A stretch of DNA of 63,955 bases, the filler included, from Octopus bimaculoides (lineage: Eukaryota): NCBI RefSeq assembly GCF_001194135.2. It is 5 parts of 2 records of this genome, joined end to end, with 100 filler letters (N's around TTAATTAATTAA, not from the genome) between each part and the next. Parts side by side here need not be neighbours in the genome. Positions count along the whole stretch, not along the records: positions 41,046 to 60,960 come from NC_068991.1; 4 more parts are not named here. One strand, 5' to 3'. The translations under genes were made by a program, and so were the position numbers. The notes under the pieces were generated by a model. That model was not told the DNA's origin. It worked only from the letters and a program-made list of their open reading frames with translations, and searched no databases. Below, in pieces: positions 40,881-60,560 of this stretch. Within the stretch, counting starts at the first letter, position 1. Each line of letters opens with the position of its first letter.

Positions 40881-41750
40881 TATATATATAATATATATAT
40901 ATTTAATATATATATATGTATGTATGCATATATATATATACACATNNNNNNNNNNNNNNNNNNNNNNNNNNNNNNNNNNNNNNNNNNNNTTAATTAATTA
41001 ANNNNNNNNNNNNNNNNNNNNNNNNNNNNNNNNNNNNNNNNNNNNTATATATATATATATATATATATAAATATATAACAAAGTTATTTTATTCTATGCA
41101 GGTGGAAATATAGGAAAAATAGGAGTTGAAAATGCACTGAGAATAGTTAAAATATATTTTTAATTATTATATTTAAAGTTTTATCGCACGGACGCAGCGG
41201 GAAGCATACAAAAGATTCTAAATTTAGCCATGAGTTCATTCTCTACAAACACTTGACAGAAAACATACAGAGCATTAATTGTTTCGACATGTTCAGTCAA
41301 CCGTGCCAGCCTTAGATTACGACGCCAAATATTGTCACTTGATCCTAACACAAGGACATAGCGGGGAACCTAAGAAATTTCTAAGATCAGTCATGTAACT
41401 ATGCTCTACCAATTAAATCCTGTTTAAAACATATATTATTTTGAGTCATGAACTCCCTATAAAAATAGGACAAGCATCACACACTAGTCAGAAGCAAGAC
41501 CACTGCAATATAAGCCACGTCTTTGTAATTCAACTTCTTGAAAATCAGTGTAAAATGTGAAACCAGTTAAAATTTTAGAAATTATAATAATAAATGCATA
41601 ATACACACACACGCGTGAACGCAAACGCACACCCGCATATACACATACGCATATATATACATGCACATAGTAATATACACATAGTGCTTTCGTTGTGACA
41701 AGACGTATTTCTCATAGCTCAGGCCAGCAGTCAGAAACCAAAGAAACAAA

Positions 41751-41982
41751 AGGCTGTGAGCTGGCAGAAACGTTAGCACGCCGGGTGAAATGCTTACCGG
41801 TATTTCGTCTGCCACTGCGTTCTGAGTTCAAATTCCGCCGAGGTCGACTTTACCTTTCATCCTTTTGGGGGCGATAAATTAAGTACCAATTACGCACTGG
41901 GGTCGATGTAATCGACTTAATCCCTTTGTCTGTCCTTGTTTGTCCCCTCTATGTTTAGCCCCTTGTGGGCAATAAAGAGATA
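41751..41982 (+). mobile_element. SINE family A, full length, young-looking, third tail type, with TSD
   Basis: Near-consensus A/B boxes; tail TAATCCCTTTGTCTGTCCTTGTTTGTCCCCTCTATGTTTAGCCCCTTGTGGGCAATAAAG. Flanked by AGAAACCAAAGAAACAAA (41733-41750) and AGAAGCCAAAGAAAGAAA (41983-42000). Confidence 0.92.
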
Positions 41983-42380
41983 AGAAGCCAAAGAAAGAAA
42001 TTTCAACTCAAATTAGCTGTAACTCTCCTTGTTTTTAGTCCCAGGACCCCTGAATTCTATCTTATCATCGGAGAATAAATTTACACAAGTCTATATACCA
42101 CCTGGAGAAACAAATATATACCAGCAATACCTGCAAAATAAAAACTAATACCAAGATTAGTTCTAAAACTAGAATCGTGAGTACAATTACTTTCTCTTGA
42201 TTTTTATTAGACACACCGCACTTTCTGATTTGTACAAAATACACTGAAGTCTCTCACACACACCCAGATATAACCACGCATTTCCGAAGATATCAACATA
42301 TATATACAGCACATTTACGATCGTACATCAAATCATCAATAACTATCCTACAATGTATAATACTGTTCTATCCACTGAAT

Positions 42381-43255
42381 ATGGTCAATAATTTTCAAAA
42401 CCGTCCGTGGGTAGAAAATAAAATCAGTGTACTGATGAACGCTTGGTACGCTCACCCTCACGATTGTGTAAAAACCAATAACTACGGTAAAATAGCCGAA
42501 AAATTAGCGTCACAGTCCTTTTACAGATTTGTAAAAGAGATCGAAAACAAAATAAAAGAAATCACAAAAAACATTTCATACCTTACACACGCACATGGTA
42601 AAACTAGAAGCTATACTTGTGCGCCAACTGACCCAATGCCAACAGGTCAGGGGTAACCTAAATGACCCGTTAGTCAGCAGCAAACAACAACCACCTTCGG
42701 ATCGCTATCTAACCTAATTCCATCCAATACCACTGTGGCCAGCAGGGACTCACTACCACAACAAAAGCTACTGCTACTACATTGGAATCATCTTGTTTGG
42801 TATCACTGTCCGACATGATTTCACCCAGCCCTACCGCTGCAACCCAAGTTTCACTGCCGCTCCAAGAAGAAGAAGAAGAAGACGGATGGGAGCACTGACC
42901 AATGAGTCTGCCAATATAGAGAAAAACCTCTACTACGAATCCTGCCGTTACTATTCCCAACAAAGCTGTAGATTTGGCTCCAGCAGCACCAACTACAAGG
43001 GACGCTGTCCTTTTTCTCCATCTTACCTCTTCATATGGTACAACAGGAAAAATCAGCCCTCAACTTCACCCCAAATACTGTCCTAAATACAAAGTCCATG
43101 GTCCTGGTCCTAAATATGGACGCACAAAATGCAAAGGTTCTACCTTCTTCCATCCTAACCTGAGCCAAAATTCTGTGTCACTAAGGATAAGCCTGATCCC
43201 AGAATGCAAGTACCACCATCTGAAGGGCACACAAAACGAACGAAAAAATATATGA
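42381..43255 (+). pseudogene. Degenerate ORF: Myb/SANT-like domain, S/T-rich and acidic linker, three CCCH-type zinc fingers (probable retrotransposon ORF1)
   Basis: RPWVENKISVLMNAW...YGKIAEKLASQSFYRFVKEIENKIKEI; TTTTKATATTLESS...EEEEEDGW; CRYYSQQSCRFG...GRCPF(fs)LH; HPKYCPKY..HG...FFHPNL...ECKYHHLKGT. Contains stops and at least 2 frameshifts. Confidence 0.65.
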
Positions 43256-43449
43256 ACAGCAACAGAGGAGTGCTACAACAACAACGAAAATAAATTAAAA
43301 CCACAATTCACCTCCTAAAATCAAACAACGAAGACAGAAATATAGGAAAACCGCAAAACCAAATAACATTAACATGAACTATGTATCACGGAATAATGAG
43401 TTAGCAGGGAAGCAAAAAATCACACAATTAATAAGGACGTAACACTCTG

Positions 43450-43754
43450 TTTGTAAAGGTAGAAACTCCGGGTTGATGTGAAGTATTTTGTATAATATAT
43501 ATAAATGAATAAATGGAGTTACACCATTTTATTCCTTTTGGAACAATACCAATGTTGTCTTCGAAACACGTGTCGGAAGTAAAAGAATTTGAATAACACC
43601 TGCGTTATTTAACTCGACCGTTGACTGAACACTATTCAATTTTTTTTCTCCGTGTTTTTCTCCTTGTCTCCGTATTCTTTCTGTTGAAGAGCGTAGCTCG
43701 AAACGTTAAAGACTTTCCGTATTCCCGAGCGTCATACTAATACATCCTTTTGTT
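43450..43754 (+). mobile_element. Penelope-like element terminal region with hammerhead-like motifs; continues into a gap
   Basis: CTTCGAAACACGTGTCGGAAGT (43559-43580) and TCTTT-CTGTTGAAGAGCGTAGCTCGAAACGTT-AAAGA (43676-43712). No PLE coding sequence is visible. Confidence 0.55.
43676..43712 (+). ncRNA. Minimal type-I hammerhead-ribozyme-like motif
   Basis: Stem I UCUUU/AAAGA; core CUGUUGA (A6 to U); extra A; stem II GAGC(GUA)GCUC; GAAAC-GUU with palindromic AACGUU. Confidence 0.6.
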
Positions 43755-44931
43755 NNNNNNNNNNNNNNNNNNNNNNNNNNNNNNNNNNNNNNNNNNNNNN
43801 NNNNNNNNNNNNNNNNNNNNNNNNNNNNNNNNNNNNNNNNNNNNNNNNNNNNNNNNNNNNNNNNNNNNNNNNNNNNNNNNNNNNNNNNNNNNNNNNNNNN
43901 NNNNNNNNNNNNNNNNNNNNNNNNNNNNNNNNNNNNNNNNNNNNNNNNNNNNNNNNNNNNNNNNNNNNNNNNNNNNNNNNNNNNNNNNNNNNNNNNNNNN
44001 NNNNNNNNNNNNNNNNNNNNNNNNNNNNNNNNNNNNNNNNNNNNNNNNNNNNNNNNNNNNNNNNNNNNNNNNNNNNNNNNNNNNNNNNNNNNNNNNNNNN
44101 NNNNNNNNNNNNNNNNNNNNNNNNNNNNNNNNNNNNNNNNNNNNNNNNNNNNNNNNNNNNNNNNNNNNNNNNNNNNNNNNNNNNNNNNNNNNNNNNNNNN
44201 NNNTATATATACATACATGCATACATACATATATGCATACATACATGCAAATGAAGACATACCTGAATAACAGTACAAATTGTTTGACTCAAAAGTTGTG
44301 ACTTTCAGCCAGGTATTTTAGGTTAATTTAAAGCATGATATTTTTCAAAGAATTTTCTCCATTCGGCTTTGATTAGGAACATTGTCTTGAAGTGGTCTTA
44401 ATTAAAAATGAGAATTGAGTCGATGAATGTGTCTCGCTATTATAATGTTATAAAATCTCCCGCAGTGGAATCCATTATTATTTTGCTGTGATAGAAAAGT
44501 TGGTAGATAGATAAATAGACAGATAGATTGATATTTTTATCACATTGAACGTACTTCTATTAGCCTCTATTAGAAATTCTTCCAGTACGTTTTGATGGAA
44601 TAGCATGAGGATAAAATATATAATATATGCTTGATTCAGCATTTAGAAAGCTTAACAAATGCTAAATTCGAGGGAGTGAAGCAAACTGCTATAAGTCATA
44701 ATCATATCAACATCAAAGGATTTTCTTTAAGCCTCCACCGATTATTAGCCAGTATGGCAAATTACTAGTAAGATTCTCAGAAGACGAATTGGCAATATCT
44801 TAATACAAGCATAAAGGAGAGATACAACGTAAATTGTTTCTTAATTTACTGCAGGAAATCGAATTTCTTGAGATGAAAGTTTGTTATATAACACACACAC
44901 AAACACATGCACCAACGAATACATACATACA

Positions 44932-44962
<31 letters not shown>

Positions 44963-44997
44963 GCGTGTATATATACATGTAATATGTTCGTATGGAC

Positions 44998-45030
<33 letters not shown>

Positions 45031-45041
45031 CATATATATGT

Positions 45042-45075
<34 letters not shown>

Positions 45076-45099
45076 GCATATATAAGCATAGATGTGTGA

Positions 45100-45137
<38 letters not shown>

Positions 45138-45772
45138 TGTATGTGCGTGTGTATGTGTATCCTGATGGAAACATTGGAAGCGGACATAAAATGATAATCA
45201 TGCACACACAAACACAGACACACACACACACACACACATATATAAAATCATTCATATACGCACATATAGAAATTAATGCTTGTTCAGTTCTCTTACAACT
45301 TCAACCATTTTTAGTCGTTTCAATATATATTTTATAAATATTTAAATTACTTTCTTCATCTTCAAAGATACATAAAAGTATTCATCGTGATATATAATAG
45401 CAAACTATATCACCAGTCGATATTTATTTATATATTTAAAACTTTCTCATTAAAAGATGAAATGTTAAAGTGCTGGGAGAAAAAGCAAACTAATAATAAC
45501 AAAGACACAACACGATAGTAAAATACGTGTATAAATATATAAACAACTACCTCTGCTTTTATAACTTCTGCATTTCGCTCTAATCTTAATAGTGATGTTC
45601 ATAAATTCATTCAGTTTGAACGGAAACATATGCAGTGATATTTTATATAAAGATGTGAGAAAACTCATATAAAAAACTCCGAAATTTGTAGACCTTTAAC
45701 TTAATTATCATTATTATAATTATCATGCCAAGATTTATCATATATATACGTACATGCATGCATGCATACACA

Positions 45773-45824
<52 letters not shown>

Positions 45825-45841
45825 TATACACACAACATATA

Positions 45842-46620
45842 CAGGGTGCCGTGAATAATTTTGTCATCTAAATTACGCAAAAATGAAAATAACACTGACA
45901 TGTCATTTTAACAGATATATTTACCAAACTTACATAAAAGTATATTGAGAGTAATGGAGGTATCACATTTTGTTGGCCTCTCGCTGAACTGCGACCCACA
46001 CATAATAATCAAGGGACTCTGAGTAGTTACGTCGCCAGATTTTAGGGGTGATGTAGTCGCAGAAATTGTCTGACAGCCATGACTAGGCTCTCCTGCCCTG
46101 CTTGCGTAGCATGTTGCAGAGGCATGTTGTCAGACACAGGGCCTTCCAGCAGCTACCTTCTTGAGCCAGGGTAGCACTACCTCCTCTAGGCACTTGATGT
46201 AGGCCTCCGTGTTGATTCTCAGACTGTGTGGGAAGATGAATTGAGGCATAATGTTGCCATCACCACTGATCATTCCTAACAACACGATGTTGACCGGATG
46301 CTTGATTTTTATCACTGTCGGTATATGTTTTAGGGATACGGCAAGCCGACGGTTGTTCTGTGATTCACCCTCTGATCTTGGCAGAAATATTTCTTGTCTG
46401 AGGAAAACCAAAGTGTGTTCAGATGGAAGAGATGCTTGCGTTCAAAAGCTACGTAGCGCGGTCTCTCCTCTTGTCCTTGAAAATAATACCGATATGCCAT
46501 TGGTGAGTTGGGAAATATGTCCAATAAGTTAACCTTGCTTAAGGCTTTCTCTCTCTCACCGATTCTCGCCGTGTTTGTGAGCTGCCTCCTCTTCCATTCG
46601 CCTCATGTGTACTTTGACTC
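45842..46620 (-). mobile_element. maT/DD37D transposon remnant, 5' end lost
   Basis: TA|CAGGGTGCCGTGAATAATTTTGTC terminus. Minus-strand LWFSSD.K.F.QDQ...IKHPVNIVLLGMISGDGNIMPQFIFPHSLRINTEAYIKCLEEVVLPWLKKVAAGRP...DYYVW. Confidence 0.85.
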
Positions 46621-46780
46621 TCTCTGTCTCCCTTGTCTCCTCATCCCATTCTCTAATTTGTATTCTTCCATATTAAATATTTACTTTGAATATATTTCTC
46701 AGTTCATCATGGCTATCCAGCAAGCGACTCTATCTCTGATCATGTGTTCGAACTGAAGCGCTTACATCATGGAAGACCAA

Positions 46781-46997
46781 TTTTGATATCAAAATTTGGC
46801 ACAAGGCCAGCAAACTTGGGGAAAGGGAAAATTCGATTACAACGACACCAGGGTTCAACTGGTACTTCTTTTCTCAATTCCGAAAGGATGAAAGGCAAAG
46901 TCACTTCGGTGGAATTTGAACTCAGAACGTATAGACGGACGAAATGCTGCTAAGTATTTTGCACTGCGTACTAACGATTCTGCCAACTCACTGCTTT
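46781..46997 (-). mobile_element. SINE family A (second tail type)
   Basis: AAAATTTGGCACAAGGCCAGCAAA...GGATGAAAGGCAAAGTCACTTCGGTGGAATTTGAACTCAGAACG...AACGATTCTGCCAACTCAC. Confidence 0.85.
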
Positions 46998-47209
46998 TAT
47001 AGAAGAACAATTTGAACAATTTAAAGGCATAGACAAAAACCGCCTACTACATACACTTTCCATTTACTGTTTATCCCAAAGGGGAGTATAAAAAAAATTA
47101 AGTGATTTAAATGGTTCAATTGTTTCTTCGCTGATGTAATTCCTTTTCTAAATAGTCTATATACTAACTAGAAAACAACGATAAATTCTGACTTTTCATC
47201 CCTTTAGAA

Positions 47210-47352
47210 TGTTATTTTCTTCATCGTCCCCGAAAACAGGAGAAAAGGCAAAATCTGAGAACTGTAACATTTGAACTCAGGGTGCAAATAATTAGAACGA
47301 ACACCGCATGTATTCTCTTCAACTCTAACGATTTTGCCAATTTGCCGCCTTA
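47210..47352 (-). mobile_element. SINE family A, highly diverged
   Basis: AAAAGGCAAAA...ATTTGAACTCAG...CTAACGATTTTGCCAATTTGCCGCCTT. Confidence 0.6.
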
Positions 47353-49421
47353 ATCATAAAACAATTTTAAGCATTCCACCATTATATTTAACATCGGACC
47401 AATAAACTTTACGCAATGAATAATGTAGTTATTCAGCCATAGCAACCAGGAACTGACCTCCTCTAGCACACATTCTTGCAACCATTATTGTACCATTACA
47501 GAAATCTGGTTATTAATATCTTTCATTACTGCTACGTAAGTGGCGAAGAGAGATTCACAGTTTGCTACCTAGTTCAATTACAGAAACAGAAATGTGATTA
47601 ATAAGTATATTACGTTTGTTATAAAAAAATATATATCGAGGATCACTTTTAGTGTGAAATGCTACAACTGTTAGCTGCATTCATTCTTAGTAGACAGATA
47701 TAATTACTTCCGTAGCAAGACGCCCTCTCGATTTTCAACCGGAAGCATTTCTCTTACATCATAACTACTTGCTAATATCCACTTACAAACTGGGAAATTT
47801 ATATAAATAATTCATATGTAATTTCTTGCATTAGGATTGATTGTACATTACAGCATCGTTCTCAATGTTGCCACTGATTAAATAAGCGATATATATCACT
47901 GATTCTTACCTATTTGCAGAGAGCTGTACCAGGCTGGAGACAGTTGTGTGTCTTCTCAATTCATATAACACATCACTGATTACGTCAGCTGGTTATCAGG
48001 TATCCTGTCGATAAAAAGCTTAATACCGCTCATCGTCATGGAACAGGGTTGTGCAAAAAAGAAGCCAACCAAGAGTTAGTAAAGTGGAGTTCGCCAAATG
48101 GTTTCGGTCGCAGTAACGATATGCTCAACTGTTTTAGATTGCTGTTGTCGCAGATGAGATAAATAATGTTAGGCATGTCTGTTCCCTTAAAGTGTGTTAA
48201 CCTGTATCCCCTTGAAATAATCAATATAATTTGTTCATTATACAATACCACCAAGTGATATTCTTTCCCATTCTCAGTTTGCCCCGATTTTCCGTATCGT
48301 TTCAAATGGACAAAATTCCTGTTAATCGACTTTATTTAAACCCTTAGAAATATTTTCCATATCTGGGAGACAATCCGGTAGTCTAATAGTTGCGTGGGTG
48401 GATGGTTAAGAGGCACATTTTGCAACTACATAGTTTCCGGATCAATTTCGTGGCAGAACTCCATGCGCATGTTCTTTCTTATTTATTCTTAAAGTGATGG
48501 CTCGAACAAAGTCTTGAGAAAGACAAATGGTAGACGGAAATTGTGTGGAAGTTCCGTTTGAGGGATATTACTTGGTTTTGCTTAGTAAGCTTAATTGTTC
48601 GTTCGGTTTAATAGTACCATCTGATCTTTTGGTGTTTAGCGGTGAACTTTCTGCTACAAACATTTGCACAAGTCTCCGATCTGACAATTATATTCTCTCA
48701 TTCATCAAACTGAGAGGCCTTGAGAATGACTATGAGCGTTGATCCTTTCCCCACCAGCACTGACCTAGCAATTTAAAAAAGAACGGTTATCTTCATATAT
48801 GTTGTGACAGCTACTATGTTAATGATGCTGCTAAGAGAAACGAAATGCTATTAACGTTCCTGTTATGAAACTAGAAATGACAGGCTACTAATTCTTGTTG
48901 ATAAGTGATCTCACAGGATATTTCCAAGACTTGAAATATACTTAGTGATCTCATATGAATGGACACAAATCAAACTGGCAATACCGCAATTTCCGATCTG
49001 TCCCAACATCATCTCAACTTTCCTATAAATTAGCCAGTATATTCTAAGTCTATGCTATTCCTATATTCCTCCATTCCATCCATTAACCTATTCGGTCATA
49101 CATTCATTCATTAAAATTTTTAAACATTTACTATTGGCAACATACAGGTTATCTCTACGTAATGTTAGAGAATTCAATCTCAACGGTATGCAATACAAAA
49201 TAGCATCTTAGGAAATGAGATTTTGTAACATTAATGCATTCATACAGAACATTAAAACTAAAGTATAGAAACATGTTTTCAAGTGGATATTGAAATTCTA
49301 TCGCCATCTCGGTTTATTATAGACACATAGCATGCTTCACGGTGCATGCCCTTTCTTCATCCTCCATATCTATGTTTTGCTTGTATTACTTATATACATT
49401 GCATATAGCGTTATACAACTA

Positions 49422-50890
49422 CTAGCTTAAAAGCCGACCACTGTGCAGACTTTTAAGTTAATTCCTGCGGAGGGCTAATTGAATCTGCAGCCTAAAACCA
49501 AAGTGAGCAATAATAATAGAGCATTTATTCGTACCCTACCATCTCTGATTTATATAACAGAGTATCACATTTGAAGAATTTTTTATGGCTGTGACATTTG
49601 GAGATCACTTTAAAGCAGCAGGATAAACAACATTCTTGCTTCTACCATTTTGTGTGAGTATGAAGAGATTGTTGCCATTTCCAACTCTGGAACAACCAAT
49701 ATAGAGCTGATCATGCGAAAAGCACCGTTGCATGAGGTGAAGTCCAACAATCTTCAGTGATTGTCCTTGACTCTTGTTAATTAACATTGCAAAACAAACT
49801 TTTACTGGAAATTGAAGTCTCTTGAATTCAAAGGGCATGTCTGCTAGAATCAGTGGAATTCTTGGATTAAACAGTTTCTACCTTTCCTTGTTCAGTGAGG
49901 ACTGTTGCTTCCAAAAAATGTGGATGCATTTGCCTGACAATCATTCTTGTTCCATTGCACAGCTTTGGAGGACCTGATTGCTCAAATGCATGATTGGAAG
50001 TCCTGTCTTCAATATCATTGTGATAGAAAACATTCCGGGAAGATCCAGAGAGTTAAGAAATTCAGTAGTATAATTCACAGCCTTATTGGGGTCCACAACA
50101 ATATCTATTGAGAAATATTTTTTGTCCTCCGTATTGATTGATTCTATAAGTTTCCAACTGACAAGTTTCAGTCTTTGGTGCAAGTATGGTTCTTTCAAAA
50201 AACCAATCATGATCTTCAAAATTATGTGCAATGTTTGGGTAAACCTTCTTAAATAACTCTTCTGCAGTTTTGGCCAAAACGCCAGAAACATTTGGAAAAT
50301 TGATACCTCCATTACTCTCTTGCTGAATGCTTCCATTTTCCAGATTCATTAGCTGAGCTGGAAATCTTCCAGCATACAAATCTCTGAATAAATTGACTGG
50401 AACTCCGGTCAGGCCGAAATTTCAATCTGACCGAAAACCCAGTTTGCGCGGAAGTCCGATTTGGGCCGAAAGTTCGAGTCCTTCAATATTTCCTTCCGAG
50501 CATTTCAGTTCACAAACTCCACGGAACTTCGAAATCTCACGGATACAAAACCTCTCTCTGTAACTTGTAGTTAGATCTAGATTTAAATGAACAGACTTGA
50601 AAAAAATTTTTTAAACTCACAAAGCTTTGGTACTACTTTAAATTCACTTTAAATGAACAAAATTGTAAATGTTTTGAGTTCTTTTAAAATTTCAATTTTG
50701 CACAGTTAGAATGTAACAAATCCTCATCCAGACCTGATCCCAGTGCTGGATATTCAAGAACCAAATGAAGGGCAAATCCCGTGATCATCCTCATTCCTAA
50801 AAGGTATATGTCTATGTGGAGAAAATGTAGACTGAGATACAGTGGTCCCGGCCGAACGGATGGACAGAATTTCGCGTTTATTATAATTGA
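49422..50890 (-). mobile_element. Internally deleted Helitron with both termini, 1469 bp
   Basis: Minus-strand 5' end A|TCAATTATAATAAACGCGAAATTCTGTCC; 3' end imperfect GC hairpin GTCTGCACAGTGGTCGGC then TTTTAAG-CTAG|T. Sits between A and T and carries a helicase remnant. Confidence 0.8.
49605..50380 (-). pseudogene. Helitron PIF1-family helicase, C-terminal part
   Basis: ERTILAPK...VNYTTEFLNSLDLPGM...PFEFKRLQFPVKVCFAMLINKSQGQSLKIVGL...CFSHDQLYIGCSRV...KNVVY; frameshifted. Confidence 0.92.
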
Positions 50891-50949
50891 TGTAAAAGTT
50901 TAACAATTGCTCTTGTAAAATACCAGCGATAACTAAAACTTGCAAGGCC

Positions 50950-51400
50950 AGTACAAACTGATACGAAAGACTTAGAAGTAATGCAATAAAGTGAGGATGT
51001 CTTCACCAAGCCACCCGTTTATGTAAAAGTGTTGAGCTGATATATTTTCCATCTCTGACGTCACAAAAGTTAACACAGATAAAATGGAAACCGTTGCCTT
51101 TGTACAGTGGGCACAAGATAGTTCTGATCAAGAAAACTAATAATAAAAGTGTACTATCCATTTACCTCCCATCTTATTCCCGAGAATTCCTTCAGGACTA
51201 AATTATCAACTTCATCTGCACTTTTTATAAAACCGCAGATATGCTTTTGCTGACGAAAGTGGTTCATATGATATCATAGGCTGGCAAAATTACCATGGAA
51301 TTCTTCAGTGATACTGCTGCTTGCTGTGTATGATTACAATGTCCGCATGTATAAAAGCAAGTGGTCTAGACTTCAAAAGCGTTACATTTTCCGCTAGAAA
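50950..51400 (-). pseudogene. Possible very old RTE-like reverse transcriptase fragment
   Basis: Minus strand RTILCPLYKGNG...CVNF...GK resembles the I.PLYK.KG...C.NYRGI..L...GK motif. Weak. Confidence 0.3.
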
Positions 51401-52731
51401 TAAAGCCATATTTCCGTCAAATCTCACTCTACCGTCATAGAAAAGACATGGTCGTCATGCAGGGGCGTTTGATCAGAGATGTCCCCTACAAGGGGATAAA
51501 GAACATCCTCCTCCCCCTCCTGGACACAGGTTCAATCCCACAGCATGACACTCGAAGCCAGTATCTACTATCAAAGGGTTAACTCCACCACAGCCAAATG
51601 AAGGAAATTTATTCGACAGAAGCCTTTGTGTGTGGAATCTTACTAGTATTGAGGTGGCAGATTTATTTGGTCATATGACTGTAGGGCGCTTGTTGTTGTG
51701 TTCCTCGTGGTGTACGTATACGAATTAGAAATCTAGTCTGATAAAAAAAAAACGAAAAAAAAACAAAACAAAATAAACCAAAAAGCAAAAATAATATAAC
51801 ACTGCTGCTCTTGTTCTTATAGTTCATATGCTGTATTTGTCGCTCAGACTAAACCACTATGTAACAGAAACCATATTCCGCAAAGAATTAACACAAATAA
51901 TTAATTAATCTTGATACGAGTTTATCTACTTTATTTATTATTCCGGTAAATTAACAAATAGAAATTCATAATTAAAGAATCCAAAATTTCACATTTATTT
52001 AATATTGTAAAACAAACCAACACTTAATTATCGGTAAATTTTGAAAAATTAGAGTGATCAATACTTTTCCGTAGAAAAGTATTTTTATTTGAAAATTTTA
52101 TTTGAAGATTGTAGGAGATTGTTTTTATGCGAGAGAATTATGAATTTGGTTATGGGTTCAAAACTAGGAAAATGTTTTAATATTTATATTTAATGATGAA
52201 TCTTGGTCGGAGAACTTGTTGCGTTATATACACTAACTTGTTGCGTTATATACACTAACAATGCAGATATAGTGATTTTATGTTTGTATGTATGTATGTA
52301 TACATACACATATACAAATATCCAAATAATGTATAAATGTGCACATGTAAATCTATCTATCTGTCTGTCTCTGTATATATATATATATATACGTGCGTGT
52401 GAAATAGAAGTTCGCACAAGAACACCTCCCCACTCCCAATATATGTGTATATGCTAAAGAAAAGTGTTTCCAAACAAAATATATAGAAATAACAAACATT
52501 TACTGAAAATGGACTCAATTGTGACGTAGAATGGAATATTTATTATAACAACGCTCCCTTCTCCTCCAACGTTTTCCTGACGATGGCTTATTCAGAATGT
52601 CCATGCCAATGTATATAAACTTACATACATGTATACACATGTAGATACGTAGTTAAATCCTGATGTATGTATCTGAGTGTGGTTTTGTGTGCAAGTCTCT
52701 GTGTATGTATGGTTACATGCTTTTTCAGTGA

Positions 52732-52774
<43 letters not shown>

Positions 52775-53869
52775 AATACATCATACATACATACACGCTC
52801 ATATATATATTTATGTGTGTATATATATGTATGTATGTATATATATATNNNNNNNNNNATATATATACATACATATACATATATATATATATATATATAT
52901 ACACATAAATATATATATATTCGTGTATGTATGTATGATGTATTTATGTATATATATACATATATATATATATGTATGTATATATGTACATTTGTATATA
53001 CATATATACATGTGTTCACTTAGACCACATTTTATCACTTCTATTTTGTTTGTCAACTCAAAGTATATTTATTCACTCAAAATTAGTTGCCATATTTACG
53101 ACTCAATCGCACGTTAAAATGTTTGCTTACTTGTACACGTGCCATTTACGAATTCATCTTCGGAAGGATTGCATTCTTGTAAACAGGTTTGTTCTGGATA
53201 AGGATATTTTAACAGATTTAATATATATACTTAGCTCTAGGAACAAAACAATCACTAAAACATAAGTGAAACTGCACGCTATGAAATAAAATCTGTGATG
53301 CGTCCATTACTATTTTCAACTGGTTTTACTGTAAAGGTTCAGGTTTCTATAATATCATCAGCGATGGTCTAGTTGCATTATCAATACAATGAAATTGTGA
53401 AAAATACCATTCCATTTAAATGCATATGTAGTTTGGGAATGAACATTAGACCATTCTATATCTAACTTGCGATACAACCGTAAATGTTTCTCTAACAATG
53501 TTAATTTTTAAAACTTTATTCCTCTTAATATGGATCACATAGAAAGGGTTGTGTTTCATCTTACCTCTTTGCCCTACACGCACTAGAAGAAGGCCAGAAT
53601 CTTCAAATCTCTTAGCCTATCAACCGATGGGAGATGGGACTCATATCATATCAAACAATAAAAGGTTGTCAAATGAACCTCATAATATTTAGGTAATGTT
53701 CTGATTTCAAATCCCATTAACATCAAATTGATTTCATCCCTTTCAAGTGGAGATAAAATAAAATGCCGAGAATTTTTGTGAAAAATCGTTTACAAGTAAT
53801 GATTTTAAATTAATATTCGACCATTGAGAATAAACGCAATAGATCTGCCACCTTGGCTATATTTCTTCT

Positions 53870-54030
53870 AATCCGTTCTGTTAGAAGTGCAAGGCCTGAA
53901 CGTGTGGGAGAATGGATAGTCGATTACATCGACCTCAGTGCTCAAATGGTACTTATTTTAGCGACCTCGAAAGGATAGAAAGCTAACTCGATATCGAGTC
54001 ACAAAGTGAAGACAAACGAGATGCCGATCA
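53870..54030 (-). mobile_element. SINE family A, 3' part
   Basis: GTGCAAGGCCTGAA...AGTCGATTACATCGACCTCAGTGCTCAAATGGTACTTATTTTAGCGACCTCGAAAGGAT. Confidence 0.72.
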
Positions 54031-54234
54031 ATCTATCTCTGTCATAATATGCGTATGTACAGTTGATATATGCCCATGTGCTCGTGCGCGTTTGTGTAAT
54101 TAGAAGAATGCATAAATTTGTTATAAGACATATGCTAACACAATAAAAGTCTTATGTTTATATAGAAATAGTAGCAGAGACACCCGGCGTTACTAGGGAT
54201 TAAAATGGCATAGTCTTTTTAATGTTTTGCTAGT

Positions 54235-54417
54235 AATGTGAATGTGGCTATGCTGGGGCACAACATTTAGTGGAAGAAATGGGCCCCAGGATTTAGTCTT
54301 TGTACGTCTAGTACTTATTCAATCGGCTCGCTTTGCTATACGACTAATTTACGGAGACGTAAATAGAGCAACATCGTTTGTCAAGCGATGGTGAGGGATA
54401 TGCATATATATGCATAC

Positions 54418-54460
<43 letters not shown>
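54235..54460 (-). mobile_element. SINE family C, 3' half plus internal microsatellite running into a gap
   Basis: GTGGCTATGCTGGGGCAC...CCCCAGGATTTAGTCTTTGTA..CTAGTACTTATTC...GACGTAAA...GTCAAGCGATGGTG, then (CATA)/(TA)n. Confidence 0.7.
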
Positions 54461-55150
54461 NNNNNNNNNNNNNNNNNNNNNNNNNNNNNNNNNNNNNNNN
54501 NNNNNNNNNNNNNNNNNNNNNNNNNNNNNNNNNNNNNNNNNNNNNNNNNNNNNNNNNNNNNNNNNNNNNNNNNNNNNNNNNNNNNNNNNNNNNNNNNNNN
54601 NNNNNNNNNNNNNNNNNNNNNNNNNNNNNNNNNNNNNNNNNNNNNNNNNNNNNNNNNNNNNNNNNNNNNNNNNNNNNNNNNNNNNNNNNNNNNNNNNNNN
54701 NNNNNNNNNNNNNNNNNNNNNNNNNNNNNNNNNNNNNNNNNNNNNNNNNNNNNNNNNNNNNNNNNNNNNNNNNNNNNNNNNNNNNNNNNNNNNNNNNNNN
54801 NNNNNNNNNNNNNNNNNNNNNNNNNNNNNNNNNNNNNNNNNNNNNNNNNNNNNNNNNNNNNNNNNNNNNNNNNNNNNNNNNNNNNNNNNNNNNNNNNNNN
54901 NNNNNNNNNNNNNNNNNNNNNNNNNNNNNNNNNNNNNNNNNNNNNNNNNNNNNNNNNNNNNNNNNNNNNNNNNNNNNNNNNNNNNNNNNNNNNNNNNNNN
55001 NNNNNNNNNNNNNNNNNNNNNNNNNNNNNNNNNNNNNNNNNNNNNNNNNNNNNNNNNNNNNNNNNNNNNNNNNNNNNNNNNNNNNNNNNNNNNNNNNNNN
55101 NNNNNNNNNNNNNNNNNNNNTATATATATATGTGTGTGTGTATGTATATA

Positions 55151-56014
55151 TAGTGTGCCGTGAATTAAATGTCTTCTAAATTGCGCAAAATGGACAGTAA
55201 AGCTGACATCTCATTTTGACAGATATATTTACCAAAATTACATTAAAATAACTTGAAATACTAAAGAGTAAAATTATTCTGTAAAATCGCCATTGGTTGC
55301 AACCACGGCCTGCAGAAGACATCAGAATATCCTGCAGCTCTTCTGGACGGTCTCTTTGTTTAAGTTGGTGAATGATGCTATAACACTTGCTTTCAGTTTA
55401 ACTTTGATGTCACAAGGAGTTTTGATGTTCTCTTGCTGAAGTGCGCACCACACATAATAATGAAGAAGATTGAAGTCTGGAGTGTTAAGTAGCCAAATTT
55501 TAGTGGTGATGTGGTCGGAGAAATTTTTTGACAGCCATGCCATGGTGCGGAGTCCTGTTGCCAGACTTAGGGTCTTCCAGCAGTCACCCTCTTAATCCAG
55601 GACAGCACTATTTCCTTCAGTTACTTGACTTAAGCCTTCCTGTTGATTCTGAAGACGTGTAGGAAAAGGAATGGCGGTATAATGCTGCCATCACTAGTAA
55701 TCACTACCAACACCATAATGGATCGCTAGTGTTCACTCCAAACACTACTCTAGGTACATGCTTTGGGGACTCAGCAAGCCAACAGTTTTTCTCTGTGTTC
55801 AGTATATATTCGTATTGGAGCTTCCGGCGCGAATGCCAAGCAGTATGGCATGTCAGTTTGAAATTTGTGGCAGAGTGAATTGCGTCATGGTGATTTTTTG
55901 TCTCACAGTCAGTGCCCAACTGACATTACTATACTGTGTAGTCGATAAAACTAAAAACAAACAATGGGCATTCGAGAAATTCAAAATATATAATGGCGAC
56001 AATTTACCAATCGC

Positions 56015-56020
<6 letters not shown>
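55151..56020 (-). mobile_element. Internally deleted maT/DD37D transposon with both TIRs, between TA tracts
   Basis: TA|TAGTGTGCCGTGAATTAAATGTC (same family as 45842) and GACAATTTACCAATCGCACCCTA|TA. Minus-strand AWLSKNFSDHITTKIWLLNTPDFNLLHYYVW. Confidence 0.8.
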
Positions 56021-56062
<42 letters not shown>

Positions 56063-56754
56063 NNNNNNNNNNNNNNNNNNNNNNNNNNNNNNNNNNNNNN
56101 NNNNNNNNNNNNNNNNNNNNNNNNNNNNNNNNNNNNNNNNNNNNNNNNNNNNNNNNNNNNNNNNNNNNNNNNNNNNNNNNNNNNNNNNNNNNNNNNNNNN
56201 NNNNNNNNNNNNNNNNNNNNNNNNNNNNNNNNNNNNNNNNNNNNNNNNNNNNNNNNNNNNNNNNNNNNNNNNNNNNNNNNNNNNNNNNNNNNNNNNNNNN
56301 NNNNNNNNNNNNNNNNNNNNNNNNNNNNNNNNNNNNNNNNNNNNNNNNNNNNNNNNNNNNNNNNNNNNNNNNNNNNNNNNNNNNNNNNNNNNNNNNNNNN
56401 NNNNNNNNNNNNNNNNNNNNNNNNNNNNNNNNNNNNNNNNNNNNNNNNNNNNNNNNNNNNNNNNNNNNNNNNNNNNNNNNNNNNNNNNNNNNNNNNNNNN
56501 NNNNNNNNNNNNNNNNNNNNNNNNNNNNNNNNNNNATGTGTCAAGGATTGTCATGGAATATAACATTTTGCACAGCGTAATGCGACAAACCGACCGGCTT
56601 TTTCACATGTTTTTTTTCTCTCCTTTTAACTTATGCAGTTTTCAAGTGATTCTCTCCCTTTTCTTTCTCTGTTTATTTATATCTTCTCTTTCTCACTTAC
56701 ACCTTCTGCAATACTTCCTCTCTTTGAGTCTATGTCTGTTTCTTTCACTCACCC

Positions 56755-56832
56755 AATCACTCACTCACTCACTCACTCACTCACTCACTCACTCACTCAC
56801 TCACTCACTCACTCACTCATTTACTCACTCAC
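56755..56832. repeat. (TCAC)n microsatellite
   Basis: About 18 TCAC units. Confidence 0.96.
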
Positions 56833-57614
56833 TCTCTCTCTCTCGGTCGTCCATAAGTGTCTTTGCTTTCACACTATTTATACTTTCTCCCTATAACATT
56901 ACTTATTTTAAATTATTTACACTCCGTCTATTTAACTACACTATTTACATTTCTCCCTCAATCGAAAACCGTCGTGATGCAGCCGATAAGCCTTCGTTAC
57001 TAACCGATGAGAATTCAACCACGCCACTCAGCGTTCATGCGTTAGAAAAAGATATCCTAAAGTGGTTCAAACGTTTTCTCTCAACCCATTTTTTCTACAG
57101 TTTTATACGCTGATATGGAGTTTGTAATTTCTGTCTACAGATTGACTTCCTTACGTGATATAATATTGTTTCACTTTTATTCTTTCACTTTTAATTCTAA
57201 TTTTATAAGACTATTATATTGTTTCAGTTTCTGTGTGTATTTCCGCGTTCGATACGTACGAGGTAGTAAAGGACATTTTATAGAACGACGACGACGTCAC
57301 GTATATGAGTGTGTATGTGTCTCTGGGTGTATGTATTTAGGTATATGAGCGTGTATGTCACTCTGACTGTGTGTGTGCTTCCGCGTTAGGTTCGTTATTA
57401 AACATACGCACGTACGCATCGAAACATACATATATGCATATGACGACTGACATGCGTGAATGTATTGCTATATGTGTCTCTGTTATTATATGTATGTGAC
57501 TGTTTGTGAGTGTGAATGTGTGTGTTTCGTCACAATTTGTATATGAATGTGTATGTATCTGTGAGTGTGTGCGTGTTTGCGCGCCCGTTATGTAAGTTAT
57601 TAAGCACACACATA

Positions 57615-58888
57615 CAAGGGGTGGACAAAATAATGGAAACACCTAGAATCAAAGCATTATAATTTTGAAATATCTATAAAACCGTCAAAAGCTTGTTTAT
57701 TTTTATGTTTTTTGATTTATTATTAGTGTTGCTTAATATGTTTTGCTTAACTTGCTCTTTCTTTTCAAATATCATCAGAAAGAGGTTATTTAAAATTCAT
57801 TAAAATGACAGATCTATCGGACTTTCAAAGAGGTCAAATTGTTGGTGCTCTTATGGCAGGCGCTAGCGTAACGAAAACAGCCGAAATGTTTGCTGTATCA
57901 AGAAGTACTGTCTCGAAAGTAATCACAGCCTTTGAGAAAGAGAGAAAAACCTCCTCGTCGAAGCAAAACTCCGGAAGAAAACCAAAACTTTCAGATAGGA
58001 ACTGTCGGACTCTTACGGGAATTGTTAGGAAGGATCACAAAAGTACAGCTCTCAAAATTACTGCAGAGCAAAATAACCACCCTGAGAACCCAGTTTTCAC
58101 AAAACCTGTTCGCCAGGAGTTGCACAAAGCCAGATTTCATGGGAGGGCTGCAATAAAAAAAACACTACTTTCAATAACAAACGTTACAAAGCATTTAGTG
58201 TGGAGTAAAAACCGACAGAATTGGTTCCTAGAGCAGTGAGAAAACGTTATTTTCTCGGACGAGTCATCCTTTGCCTTATCTCCGACCAACGGCTAAGTAT
58301 ACGTGTGGAGATCGCCAAAAGAAGCATTTGACCCAAACCGCCTTCTTCCAACTGTTAAATATGGAGGAGGATCTGTGATGATCTGGGGGTCTATACCTTG
58401 GAAATCCGCCAGCCCAATGATTTCCCTTCATAGCCGAATTAATAGTCAATACTATTTAAACATTTTATCTGATGAAATTCATCCTATGGTTGCGGAACTG
58501 TTTCCGGAGGGAAACGTAATCTTTCAGGATGATAATGCACCAATTCACACAGCTAAAGTTGTTACTGAATGGCCCGAGGAACATTCTAGTGAAGTTGAAC
58601 ATCTTATGTGGCCACCACAGTCCCCAGATCTAAATATTATTGAACATTTATGGCGCATTTAAAAAAAATGATTAAGGAGTCGATATCCTCCACCATCATA
58701 ACTACAAGAACTGATGACTGTTTTAACTGAAGAACGGACAAATACTCATTCCGAAACAATTCAAACTTTGTACTAGTCCATACCGCATAAAATTCAAACT
58801 GTAATTCCTGCAAAAGGCTGTCCTCCCCCATATTAAAATAAATTTGTTTGAAATTCTAAGGTGTTCCCATTATTTTGTCCAACCTGTG
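57615..58888 (+). mobile_element. Full-length Tc1-like transposon, 1274 bp, DD36E spacing
   Basis: TIRs TA|CAAGGGGTGGACAAAATAATGGAAACACCT and TA|CACAGGTTGGACAAAATAATGGGAACACCT (reverse complement of the right end); TA on both sides. Confidence 0.93.
57805..58836 (+). pseudogene. Tc1-family transposase, 343 codons in one frame, about 6 nonsense mutations
   Basis: MTDLSDFQRGQIVG...SGRKPKLS...IFSDES...YGGGSVMIWG...FQDDNAPIH...WPPQSPDLNIIEHLW...AKGCPPPY*. Confidence 0.93.
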
Positions 58889-59176
58889 TACATCTACACA
58901 TACATATACATATGCGACGAGAACGGCTGGAGGTGAAACTCTTGACAAAAAACAATTACGTGGAAGATTCAAGTTATATAAAAATACACATCTACTGTTC
59001 AATAAACAGTTCATAATGATCGCAGCAGTTGCAAGGTATTTACAGTTTGCTTATATTTGGTTAATTTACACCGCATACAAAAATATAGACATACTACATA
59101 CAACTGCTTACAAATATATAGATTACTGTATATTTTTTCTATGTTCATAATATCTTGCTTCAAATAGTGAAAACAT

Positions 59177-59820
59177 ATGCCACCAAAGAAAAAACGTAAT
59201 CTCTCCAGAAACAGCTATAAGGCAAGGAGGAATGCAGAAAACTGAAGGCGAGGGTATCAAGACTTAAGAAACATGAGACTTTCTCAATATCAGCGACAGT
59301 TTCTCAATATCAGCAACAGTACGTCAGATGGAGTCTCAATACAGAAGGGACATGTCACTTTCCAAAGATCACCAAAGGCATGCTGCAGCACGTCAAATAC
59401 AGTATCAAGAGAGAAGGAGAGGAGACTTTCTCAACATCAGGAAAAGCATGCTACATCACGTCTGATAGAGTCACAAGACGTAAGGAAGACGAGACTTTCT
59501 CAAGATCAACAAAGACATGCTGTAGCACATCAAATGGAGTCTCAAGAGAGAAGGGAGATGTGACTACGCCAAGATCAGCAAAGGCATGCTACAGCACTTA
59601 ATGCTGAATCATTAAAACAACGTTTAGCACGCCAGATTACAGCGTGATCCAATAGAATAGCTTTCGGAAACAGACCACGTACAAATTTTTCTTCACAACA
59701 CTTGGAGCTGCTTTCAAACATGATCCATCCCATTTTTAAAAAATGATGATTCTGTCCAAAGTGGCGTGCTAAACACAAATTGTCGTTCATGCAAAGCTTT
59801 AAAATTTACTCCACAAATGT
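59177..59820 (+). pseudogene. Helitron Rep/Hel N-terminal fragment (23-aa charged repeats and start of a Cys-rich motif)
   Basis: MPPKKKRNLSR...; 69-bp repeats (RLSQDQQRHA...ESQERRE); GAAFKHDPS...VQSGVLNTNCRSCKALKF, matching the Helitron AAF.YD....IG.M...C..C.A.KF motif. Confidence 0.72.
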
Positions 59821-60140
59821 TTTGACGTCAATACTGCACTTTCCTGTATCACCTGTTTTAACATAACTGTAATATATAGATAAAAACTATGCCGTATATA
59901 AAGAAAAATATATGACCATATCGGTGGACTATTCAAGACTATTTGATTCACTCCCACTTATGTATATGCACATATAATAGTTCATTCTTCATTTTTATCT
60001 GTGGGCATTCTGAGACGTCATGGAGATAGTTTTCTTCCGATATTTCGAAATGGTTATATGACCGTCGAATCATTAATTTATTTGCATGTTTTTATTTGCA
60101 TGTTTTTGAATACCGCAAGGGGTTTTGGGCTGTCGTGTTT

Positions 60141-60200
60141 GGGTAGTAAAATACAGTGTAGTAAAATTCAGGGTAGTAAAATACAGGGTAGTAAAATTCT
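60141..60200. repeat. 15-bp x4 tandem repeat (GGGTAGTAAAATACA)
   Basis: Four units read directly. Confidence 0.92.
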
Positions 60201-60373
60201 TCACATACAAAAGTAGTTGGGCCGGTCTTGTATCCTCATCTGACCAAATCAACTTTCGGTCTACGTAAAATCGTTCATTCATGATCTCTGTGAAGTAAAA
60301 CTTGGTATAACCTGCGAATTTTACAAAATACTTCGAAGTCAAATCTAAAAGTGAAGACATAGTACATACTGAA

Positions 60374-60560
60374 TCTGTATATATATCATACAGAAGATGT
60401 CTGTCTGTCTGTCTGTCTGTCTACATTTTACAACCGATTTGCACCAACTTTCATATATAAGTTTCTGAAGTCCTATTACACGTCATATGCTATTTTATTT
60501 TTCCGTACGTCGATTGTGGTGGCCCTTCAGGGACAGATAAACCCCTTAAGTCTTTCTATT
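60374..60560 (+). mobile_element. Probable 5' end of a non-autonomous Helitron/Helentron-like element
   Basis: A|TCTGTATATATATCATACAGAAGAT followed by (GTCT)n and CAACCGATTTGCACCAACTTT. A TC start with an internal (GTCY)n is typical of DINE/HINE-like elements. Confidence 0.5.

What the first reader, a model, noticed from the sequence alone, without database searches (positions are those of the whole stretch)
42381..43255. Degenerate ORF combining a Myb/SANT-like (trihelix-type) domain with triple CCCH zinc fingers
Seen: W-x5-VLM-x2-W...Y-x2-IAEKL...R...EIENKIK (Myb_DNA-bind_4-like pattern); an S/T-rich and poly-E linker; C-x7-C-x12-C-x3-H; and two further HP-x2-C...C...H units in which several Cys codons have drifted by one base (CGC, TCT, AGC). 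Established: tandem CCCH fingers occur in ORF1 of some invertebrate non-LTR retrotransposons, and Myb/SANT proteins are typical of PIF/Harbinger elements. I do not know this combination as a described ORF1. Inference: the 5' part of an unusual retroelement whose ORF1 couples DNA- and RNA-binding modules, or a decayed captured or domesticated gene.
Basis: partly seen in the sequence, partly recalled or inferred. Interest (0 to 1): 0.7.

Follow-up and report, generated by a model that had tools for sequence, protein, structure and literature searches.

The report
Dead Myb-plus-zinc-finger gene relic
This is a broken, apparently single-copy remnant of a small gene in repeat-rich, octopus-like DNA that once joined a Myb/SANT-type DNA-binding domain to at least one CCCH zinc finger; the pairing is unusual, but nothing shows that it is an active element or part of a retrotransposon.

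Summary
The observation mostly holds; the interpretation does not.

- **Myb/SANT-like domain:** the intact 91-codon ORF at 42381-42656 hits Pfam Myb_DNA-bind_4 (E 1.4e-5, 25.9 bits against a cut-off of 27). It aligns in register with every repeat of two multi-Myb proteins, the only significant hits among 1.84 billion representative proteins.
- **Broken reading frame:** downstream, the "ORF" exists only as a path through three frames, with at least 3-4 frameshifts and in-frame stops.
- **First CCCH unit (42943-43021):** just under Pfam thresholds (zf-CCCH 19.5 against 20.5 bits). It still beats 100 of 100 shuffles that keep the Cys and His in place, so it is probably a real finger remnant.
- **Second and third "drifted" fingers:** no profile match, even with the Cys put back. 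"Triple CCCH" is therefore not established.
- **Neighbourhood:** the visible flanks show no reverse transcriptase, endonuclease, DDE transposase, terminal inverted repeats, target-site duplication or poly(A). An assembly gap lies 500 bp downstream.
- **Relatives:** none in 5.8 billion protein clusters, although a Tc1 fragment from the same piece finds 152, the best-named from Octopus sinensis.

Best reading: a decayed, low-copy, intronless gene relic. Retroelement ORF1 is unsupported. Interest is low to moderate.

The parts
42000..43445 (+). Compositional unit that contains the relic. The + strand is A/C-rich and G-poor (negative GC skew, positive AT skew). It is bounded on the left by a SINE-like repeat ending near 41990 and on the right by a skew reversal near 43445.
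   Evidence: Fine composition profile; base counts of 42381-43255 are A 0.35, C 0.26, T 0.22, G 0.17.
42381..42656 (+). Intact 91-codon ORF (ATG to TAA), the only unbroken part. The frame is also open for about 63 codons upstream, without any start codon.
   Evidence: the ORF listing; translations.
42402..42611 (+). Myb/SANT-like (Myb_DNA-bind_4-type, trihelix-like) DNA-binding domain, residues 8-77 of the ORF. It is about 6 residues shorter than the fish repeats in the loop after the first helix.
   Evidence: Pfam PF13837 E 1.4e-5, 25.9 bits, profile positions 2-78 of 89. Exhaustive phmmer gave only two hits, both proteins with 7-8 Myb_DNA-bind_4 repeats. In-register alignments to all repeats.
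42657..42942 (+). Broken linker: two in-frame stops (42654 TAA, 42660 TGA), S/T/Q-rich low-complexity coding in competing frames, and an (AAG)6 run at 42864-42882 that reads poly-E in one frame. The ancestral frame cannot be determined.
   Evidence: Three-frame translation; TRF.
42943..43021 (+). CCCH finger remnant (unit 1): CRYYSQQSCRFGSSSTNYKGRCPF, then LH after a 1-nt frameshift in the T5 run at 43011-43015. The spacing C-x7-C-x12-C-x3-H is non-canonical. It is either one finger with an insertion or two half-fingers.
   Evidence: zf_CCCH_4 E 1e-4 (22.7 bits), zf-CCCH_4 4.2e-4, zf-CCCH 9e-4 (19.5 against 20.5 bits), matched in two stretches. 0 of 100 Cys/His-fixed shuffles hit any CCCH family at E<=1e-3.
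43079..43153 (+). Putative drifted finger (unit 2): C-x13-R(CGC)-x5-S(TCT)-x3-H, preceded by HPKY. It contains a 27-nt internal duplication (GTCCTAAATA at 43080 and 43107). Unproven.
   Evidence: Sequence; direct repeat D5; no Pfam hit even with Cys restored.
43163..43219 (+). Putative drifted finger (unit 3): S(AGC)-x8-S(AGC)-x4-C-KYH-H, preceded by HPNL. Unproven. The frame ends at TGA 43253-43255.
   Evidence: Sequence; relaxed-pattern scan; no Pfam hit with Cys restored.
43256..43445 (+). A-rich, non-coding tail of the compositional unit (AT skew 0.4-0.6). It is not a poly(A) tract.

Best explanation
The stretch is the dead remnant of one small intronless gene of about 290 codons, lying in repeat-rich cephalopod (octopus-like) DNA.

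When intact, the gene encoded an N-terminal Myb/SANT-like three-helix DNA-binding domain (Myb_DNA-bind_4 type), an S/T-rich and acidic linker, and a C-terminal Cys/His region with at least one CCCH-type finger and possibly up to three. Such a protein would be expected to bind a specific DNA site through the trihelix and single-stranded nucleic acid through the CCCH part. That function is inferred from the domain families only.

The gene has since taken at least 3-4 frameshifts, stop codons, a 27-nt internal duplication and possibly loss of several Cys codons, so it makes no such protein now.

Its source was either the accessory Myb-like gene of a DNA transposon (PIF/Harbinger-like) or a lineage-specific host gene or retrocopy. 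The visible sequence cannot decide between these. It is low-copy or unique in the data I could reach.

Shown: the Myb domain, the coding-relic signal, one CCCH remnant, and the absence of neighbouring enzyme domains. Inferred: that both domains belonged to one ORF, the function, and the origin.
For: - **Myb domain:** Pfam E 1.4e-5, and E 0.0016 even in the whole-frame scan, where it is the only domain in six frames of 2.7 kb. phmmer E 7.8e-8 and 4.6e-7 against 1.84e9 representatives, to proteins with 8 and 7 Myb_DNA-bind_4 repeats, with consistent register PW..E...L...W...C.k...y..Ia.kla..g..R......kIK.
- **Coding relic:** the top three open stretches on the + strand are 122, 111 and 91 codons, tiling 875 nt in successive frames (P about 0.001 against dinucleotide shuffles).
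- **CCCH unit 1:** three CCCH families at E 1e-4 to 9e-4; 0 of 100 ligand-fixed shuffles do as well.
- **One unit rather than two fragments:** same strand, one continuous A/C-rich skew domain from 42000 to 43445, and no repeat boundary between the two halves.
- **Host and positive control:** the Tc1-like ORF at 57805-58236 finds 152 homologues, the best-named in Octopus sinensis at 70% identity, plus many ORFs on long ENA contigs. The stitched 291-aa product finds nothing at E<=10, and the exact ORFs are absent from the collection.
Against: - Both domain hits fall just under Pfam's curated cut-offs: 25.9 against 27 bits, and 19.5 against 20.5.
- The CCCH E-values depend on cutting the query down to the candidate stretch. 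In the 902-aa whole-frame scan no CCCH hit passes E 0.1.
- Unit 1 needs a hypothetical 1-nt deletion, and its spacing is non-canonical.
- Units 2 and 3 have no profile or PDB support.
- There is no second copy, orthologue or parent gene, so co-occurrence of the two domains in one protein is untested.
- The structure model is low-confidence (pLDDT 57.6, two helices) and does not confirm the fold.
- An assembly gap of unknown true size (43755-44203) could hide a neighbouring ORF.
Confidence: 0.55

Rival explanations
1. It is the decayed Myb-like (accessory) gene of a PIF/Harbinger-type DNA transposon. The transposase gene and terminal inverted repeats have been lost, or are hidden in or beyond the assembly gap.
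For: - Harbinger elements encode a DDE transposase plus a SANT/Myb/trihelix protein, and both are needed for transposition (PMC9392472, read).
- The N-terminal position of the domain followed by a low-complexity or acidic linker fits such proteins (my own knowledge).
- The piece is full of other transposon debris.
Against: - No DDE_Tnp_4 or any other domain in six frames of 41046-43754 and 44204-49100.
- No terminal inverted repeats or 3-bp TSD around the unit. The best inverted repeat is 13 nt at 92%.
- No other copies found.
- CCCH fingers are not a described feature of Harbinger Myb-like proteins (my own knowledge; none found).
Confidence: 0.2
2. One reading: it is the 5' part (ORF1) of an unusual non-LTR retrotransposon that couples DNA-binding and RNA-binding modules.
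For: - The sense strand is A-rich, as in many LINE sense strands.
- A nucleic-acid-binding ORF with zinc fingers is the general logic of ORF1 proteins (my own knowledge).
Against: - No RT or endonuclease within 500 bp before the gap, or in the 4.9 kb after it.
- No poly(A), simple-repeat tail or TSD.
- No further copies, although cephalopod ORFs are in the searched collection.
- The literature search found no ORF1 with CCCH fingers. From my own knowledge, known ORF1 zinc motifs are CCHC knuckles.
Confidence: 0.07
3. Two unrelated decayed coding fragments (a Myb-like gene piece and a CCCH gene piece) happen to lie next to each other, so the 'architecture' is an accident of juxtaposition.
For: - The two domains are in different frames.
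- They are separated by about 290 nt of broken low-complexity sequence with stops.
- No homologue shows them together.
Against: - Same strand.
- Continuous strand-skew domain.
- Frames tile without a long closed interval.
- No recognisable repeat junction between them.
Confidence: 0.13
4. It is chance: an accidental ORF in T- and G-poor DNA with motif look-alikes.
For: - Stop codons are rarer on this strand, so long open frames come more easily.
- The relaxed 'drifted Cys' pattern occurs 57 times in the six frames of the piece.
- Both Pfam hits are below the curated thresholds.
Against: - Myb E 1.4e-5, plus library-wide phmmer E 7.8e-8.
- No other Pfam hit at E<=0.1 in the 2.7 kb or at E<=0.01 in the 4.9 kb of flanking six-frame translation.
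- Open-frame excess, P about 0.001.
- 0 of 100 ligand-fixed shuffles match CCCH profiles.
Confidence: 0.05

Closest known systems
Myb/SANT-like DNA-binding proteins of the Myb_DNA-bind_4 (PF13837) class, such as vertebrate MSANTD and ZSCAN20-like proteins and fish multi-repeat proteins like P0001 and P0002
   Same: The spacing of conserved aromatic and hydrophobic positions is the same: PW..E...L...W, then Y/F..IA.KL, then R......KIK. The profile match covers positions 2-78 of 89.
   Different: The window copy lacks about 6 residues in the first loop. It scores 1 bit under the curated cut-off, occurs as a single repeat at the very N-terminus, is followed by a CCCH-like region, and sits in a broken gene.
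Myb-like accessory protein of PIF/Harbinger DNA transposons and its domesticated descendants (NAIF1, MSANTD2 family)
   Same: A small, apparently intronless gene with an N-terminal SANT/Myb/trihelix domain, located in a transposon-rich region (PMC9392472).
   Different: No partner DDE transposase, TIRs or TSD are visible. A CCCH region is not a described part of these proteins. No family of copies was found.
Tandem CCCH zinc-finger RNA-binding proteins (Pfam zf-CCCH PF00642, zf-CCCH_4 PF18044, zf_CCCH_4 PF18345)
   Same: It shares the C-x7-C start with CR.. and CRFG context and the CPFLH end, with an aromatic residue two positions before His in all three candidate units.
   Different: No unit has intact canonical C-x7-8-C-x4-6-C-x3-H spacing. 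Unit 1 is 1 bit below threshold and needs a frameshift. Units 2 and 3 lack two Cys each and match no profile.
ORF1 proteins of non-LTR retrotransposons
   Same: Only the general idea of a 5' ORF that binds nucleic acid, and an A-rich sense strand.
   Different: No ORF2, no 3' tail and no copies. From my own knowledge, known ORF1 types use RRM, coiled-coil, CCHC knuckles, PHD or esterase domains, not Myb plus CCCH. The paper library gave no counter-example.

Membership tests
Myb_DNA-bind_4 (PF13837) Myb/SANT-like domain | Profile match at or above Pfam's gathering score (27 bits) | tested here: inconclusive
   25.9 bits, E 1.4e-5, covering 77 of 89 profile positions. This is significant but 1.1 bits under the curated cut-off.
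Myb_DNA-bind_4 (PF13837) Myb/SANT-like domain | Conserved aromatic and hydrophobic pattern of the three helices, in register with bona fide members | tested here: met
   phmmer aligns ORF residues about 5-65 in the same register to 7 repeats of P0001 and 5 repeats of P0002. Pfam scores these proteins at 2.7e-145 and 1.6e-126 for PF13837.
Myb_DNA-bind_4 (PF13837) Myb/SANT-like domain | Three-helix bundle fold | tested here: inconclusive
   The single-sequence AlphaFold2 model has pLDDT 57.6 and pTM 0.32, with two helices (9-24, 34-71). It is too poor for a fold search.
CCCH zinc finger (PF00642 and relatives) | Four ligands with spacing C-x7-8-C-x4-6-C-x3-H in one reading frame | tested here: not met
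   A strict regular expression (first gap allowed 4-15 residues, wider than the canonical 7-8) finds none in the region. Unit 1 is C-x7-C-x12-C-x3-H and only after removing one T. Units 2 and 3 have one, or at most two, true Cys at ligand positions.
CCCH zinc finger (PF00642 and relatives) | Profile match at or above the gathering score, and above chance | tested here: inconclusive
   Unit 1: zf-CCCH 19.5 against 20.5 bits, zf_CCCH_4 22.7 against 29, zf-CCCH_4 20.4 against 24.6. These are below the cut-offs, yet 0 of 100 shuffles with Cys/His fixed reach E 1e-3. Units 2 and 3: no hit even with Cys restored.
Non-LTR retrotransposon | ORF2 with endonuclease and reverse transcriptase downstream on the same strand | tested here: not met
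   No Pfam domain other than Myb in six frames of 41046-43754, and none in 44204-49100. Caveat: the assembly gap at 43755-44203.
Non-LTR retrotransposon | 3' poly(A) or simple-repeat tail and target-site duplication; multiple copies | tested here: not met
   No tail and no flanking direct repeats. No second copy in the piece or in the searched protein and metagenome collections. The host genome itself could not be searched.
PIF/Harbinger DNA transposon | Gene for a SANT/Myb/trihelix protein | tested here: met
   The Myb_DNA-bind_4-like domain at the N-terminus. The family definition is from PMC9392472.
PIF/Harbinger DNA transposon | DDE transposase gene in the same element | tested here: not met
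   No DDE_Tnp_4 or other transposase domain within the visible flanks. The only DDE_3 in the piece belongs to a Tc1-like element 15 kb away.
PIF/Harbinger DNA transposon | Terminal inverted repeats flanked by a 3-bp target-site duplication | tested here: not met
   The best inverted repeat around the unit is 13 nt at 92% (42230 and 43483), which is at chance level for 1.9 kb.
Processed pseudogene (retrocopy of a host mRNA) | Identifiable parent gene; poly(A) tract and TSD | tested here: not met
   No related protein in 5.8e9 clusters at E<=10, nor among the 1.84e9 representatives apart from two distant fish proteins. No poly(A) or TSD.

The most novel reading that the evidence does not exclude
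The relic is a fossil of an undescribed cephalopod gene or transposon-accessory family. In it, one small protein couples a Myb/SANT trihelix DNA-binding domain to tandem CCCH fingers that bind RNA or single-stranded DNA. I could not find this architecture in any searched protein collection or paper. Intact members might survive elsewhere in cephalopod genomes.
Probability: 0.15. Interest if true: 0.45.

Novelty: new variant of a known kind. Interest (0 to 1): 0.25.

Why it matters
If intact relatives exist, a Myb/SANT plus CCCH protein would be a new domain combination. It could be a new kind of transposon accessory protein, or a cephalopod-specific regulator that binds both DNA and RNA.

As it stands, the locus is one decayed copy with no partner genes. 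Its practical value is small: it is a query for mining cephalopod genomes. It also warns against calling motif strings stitched across frames an architecture before copies are compared.

Tried and rejected
**Searches for relatives or other copies, all negative**
- Word-seeded search of the stitched 291-aa product against 5.8e9 protein clusters: nothing at E<=0.01, then nothing at E<=10.
Only the 91-aa ORF could be run there.
- Exact look-ups of ten window ORFs, and of the 91-aa ORF's encoding contigs: none on record.
- JGI metagenome scan for relatives of the 91-aa ORF: 600 pattern matches, none confirmed.
- Cephalopod-like ENA contigs fetched through Tc1 homologues (L001, L002) share only the Tc1 element with the piece. 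Sampling more 20-kb loci was judged hopeless for a low-copy sequence.

**Structure and domain checks that gave nothing**
- PDB sequence search: the C-terminal region has no hit at E<=10, and the N-terminal ORF has only noise.
- The AlphaFold2 single-sequence model was too poor to use, so no fold search was run.
- Restoring the four 'drifted' Cys in units 2 and 3 and rescanning Pfam: no hit.
- Six-frame Pfam scans of the flanks for RT, APE or DDE domains: nothing.
- Giving DNA references that contain stop codons to the Pfam tool is not accepted.

**Other negative checks**
- Rfam and tRNA scans of the piece: nothing.
- TIR, TSD and poly(A) search: nothing convincing.
- Short introns as the cause of the frame changes: rejected. 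The frames overlap as open stretches, and a candidate intron of about 21 nt at 42650 is too short.
- Literature searches for Myb plus CCCH in transposon ORFs, or CCCH in ORF1: no relevant paper.

Full report
**What the piece is.** The usable piece (41046-60960) is AT-rich, about 36% GC. It has four assembly gaps and many (CA)n, (TA)n, (CATA)n and (TCAC)n microsatellites. It also carries transposon debris:
- a Tc1-like HTH plus DDE_3 pair at 57805-58662;
- weak Pif1/helicase fragments at 49605-50379 on the minus strand;
- a SINE-like repeat present three times.

It holds no Rfam family and no tRNA. The Tc1-like ORF finds 152 homologues. The best-named is an Octopus sinensis protein at 70% identity, and many others are ORFs called on long ENA contigs. 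The host is therefore an octopus-like cephalopod. This also shows that the big protein collection contains cephalopod ORFs, which makes negative searches for the finding meaningful.

**Checking the observation.** The described residues are all there, but they are not one ORF.
- Frame A holds an intact 91-codon ORF (42381-42656), MVNNFQNRPWVENKISVLMNAWYAHPHDCVKTNNYGKIAEKLASQSFYRFVKEIENKIKEI... It ends at TAA, with a TGA one codon later in the same frame.
- The S/T-rich and poly-E linker sits in other frames. The poly-E is an (AAG)6 run at 42864-42882.
- CRYYSQQSCRFGSSSTNYKGRCPF is in frame B. Its closing His appears only if one T of the T5 run at 43011-43015 is dropped.
- The two 'HP-x2-C' units are in frame C and run to TGA at 43253-43255.

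At least 3-4 frame changes are needed to read through. Even so, the three longest open stretches on the + strand (122, 111 and 91 codons) tile the 875 nt far better than dinucleotide shuffles do: a sum of 324 against 193 +/- 32 (P about 0.001). This is the signature of a formerly continuous ORF broken by a few indels.

**The Myb/SANT-like domain is real.**
- Pfam gives Myb_DNA-bind_4 at E 1.4e-5 and 25.9 bits, 1.1 bits under the curated cut-off, covering profile positions 2-78 of 89.
- It remains the only hit (E 0.0016) when all six whole frames of 41046-43754 are scanned.
- An exhaustive phmmer search of 1.84 billion representatives returns only two proteins, at E 7.8e-8 and 4.6e-7. Pfam shows these to be arrays of 8 and 7 Myb_DNA-bind_4 repeats.
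- The ORF aligns to every repeat in the same register, with a loop about 6 residues shorter.
- A single-sequence AlphaFold2 model was too weak to add anything (pLDDT 57.6).

**The CCCH part is only partly real.**
- Unit 1 (42943-21), with only the 1-nt frame correction, hits three CCCH families at E 1e-4 to 9e-4. zf-CCCH scores 19.5 bits against a cut-off of 20.5, and the match comes in two stretches.
- As a control I made 100 peptides of the same composition with the Cys and His held in place. None reached E 1e-3 for any CCCH family. The non-ligand residues (CRYY, CRFG, CPFLH) therefore carry finger-specific signal.
- Caveats for unit 1: the spacing C-x7-C-x12-C-x3-H is non-canonical, and in a whole-frame scan the hit is not significant.
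- Units 2 and 3 each need two Cys 'reversions' (CGC and TCT in unit 2; AGC twice in unit 3). Even with those Cys restored, neither hits any Pfam family.
- The whole C-terminal region hits nothing in the PDB at E<=10.
- Three things favour units 2 and 3. A post-hoc relaxed pattern occurs twice in 118 residues against 0.17 expected from the six frames of the piece (p about 0.013). An aromatic residue sits two positions before each His. A 27-nt internal duplication in unit 2 could explain its long first spacer.
- I therefore accept one finger remnant and regard 'triple' as unproven.

**Surroundings.**
- The relic sits in a 1.45-kb domain (about 42000-43445) whose + strand is A/C-rich and G-poor. 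A SINE-like repeat bounds it on the left and a skew reversal on the right.
- There are no convincing terminal inverted repeats, flanking direct repeats or poly(A).
- No other Pfam domain appears in six frames of the 2.7 kb around it or of the 4.9 kb beyond the gap at 43755-44203.
- No second copy exists in the piece.

**Relatives.** None was found.
- The stitched 291-aa product finds nothing at E<=10 among 5.8 billion clusters.
- Exact look-ups fail.
- A JGI metagenome scan confirms nothing.

Given the Tc1 positive control, the sequence is not a high-copy family with callable ORFs in the cephalopod data held in the collection. The host genome itself could not be searched.

**Interpretation.** The best-supported reading is a decayed, low-copy, intronless gene relic. 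Its intact ancestor joined an N-terminal Myb/SANT trihelix to at least one CCCH finger through an S/T-rich acidic linker. Its function (DNA recognition plus binding of single-stranded nucleic acid) is inferred from the domain families only.

Its origin is open:
- **PIF/Harbinger accessory gene.** This is attractive because those elements encode a SANT/Myb/trihelix protein (PMC9392472). However, the DDE transposase, TIR and TSD tests fail here.
This fails every testable membership feature. Its premise, CCCH fingers in ORF1, found no support in the paper library: the co-occurrences listed concern host factors such as ZAP and ZCCHC3.
- **Juxtaposition of two unrelated fragments.** This cannot be excluded without other copies.
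- **Pure chance.** This is unlikely.

**Verdict.**
- Observation: partly confirmed. The Myb domain is real, one CCCH remnant is probably real, and two further fingers are unsupported. It is not a single ORF.
- Interpretation: partly supported. 'Decayed gene' holds; 'retroelement 5' part' does not.
- Novelty: the Myb plus CCCH pairing would be a new variant of known kinds, but it rests on one dead copy.
- Interest: 0.25.

Noticed in passing
window 57653-58662 (+): Tc1/mariner-type transposon remnant. ORF 57805-58239 has HTH_Tnp_Tc3_2, HTH_23 and HTH_28; ORF 58303-58662 has DDE_3. The DNA is 83.5% identical over 946 nt to an ENA metagenome contig (L001). There are 152 protein homologues, the best-named from Octopus sinensis (70%), which points to an octopus-like host.
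   Followed up: yes
window 41749-41918 (+); inverted copies at 46830-46998 and 53918-53996: A repeat of about 170 nt with 77-79% identity between copies, lying directly upstream of the relic. From memory it resembles the abundant octopus SINE; this was not tested against a repeat library. Rfam and ARAGORN find no tRNA-like head.
   Followed up: partly
window 49605-50379 (-): Broken ORFs with weak helicase signals (Pif1_2B_dom E 6.7e-4; Herpes_Helicase C-terminal part E 2.4e-3). They may be a Helitron or Pif1-like helicase remnant.
   Followed up: partly
window 45862-46013 and 55170-55465 (direct repeats, 83%), with ORFs 46130-46411 (-) and 55322-55543 (-): Two diverged copies of the same unclassified element about 9.3 kb apart. 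The ORFs look transposase-like to the eye (…DYYVW… motif), but Pfam gives no hit even at E<=1.
   Followed up: partly
window 59251-59623 (+): A minisatellite-like array of 42-105-nt units spaced 69 and 137 nt apart (64-81% identity). It reads through as ORFs rich in S, R, E and K (59273-59563, 59380-59601). No domain was found.
   Followed up: no
window 43080-43116 (+): The 10-nt motif GTCCTAAATA is repeated 27 nt apart inside the putative second finger. This is an in-frame 9-codon partial duplication (PKYKVHGPG / PKYG).
   Followed up: partly
window 43446-43754 (+): Immediately after the relic the strand skew flips. This 300-nt stretch has a 12-nt tandem TTTTTCTCCGTG x2 and runs into the assembly gap at 43755-44203. 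It is probably a different repeat, and it remains unidentified.
   Followed up: no
window 56745-56844 (+) and 45770-45830: Long (TCAC)n and (CA)n microsatellites create spurious long 'ORFs' and spurious strict CCCH pattern matches (CVCVCV…CMH). This is a trap for motif-based reading of this genome.
   Followed up: yes
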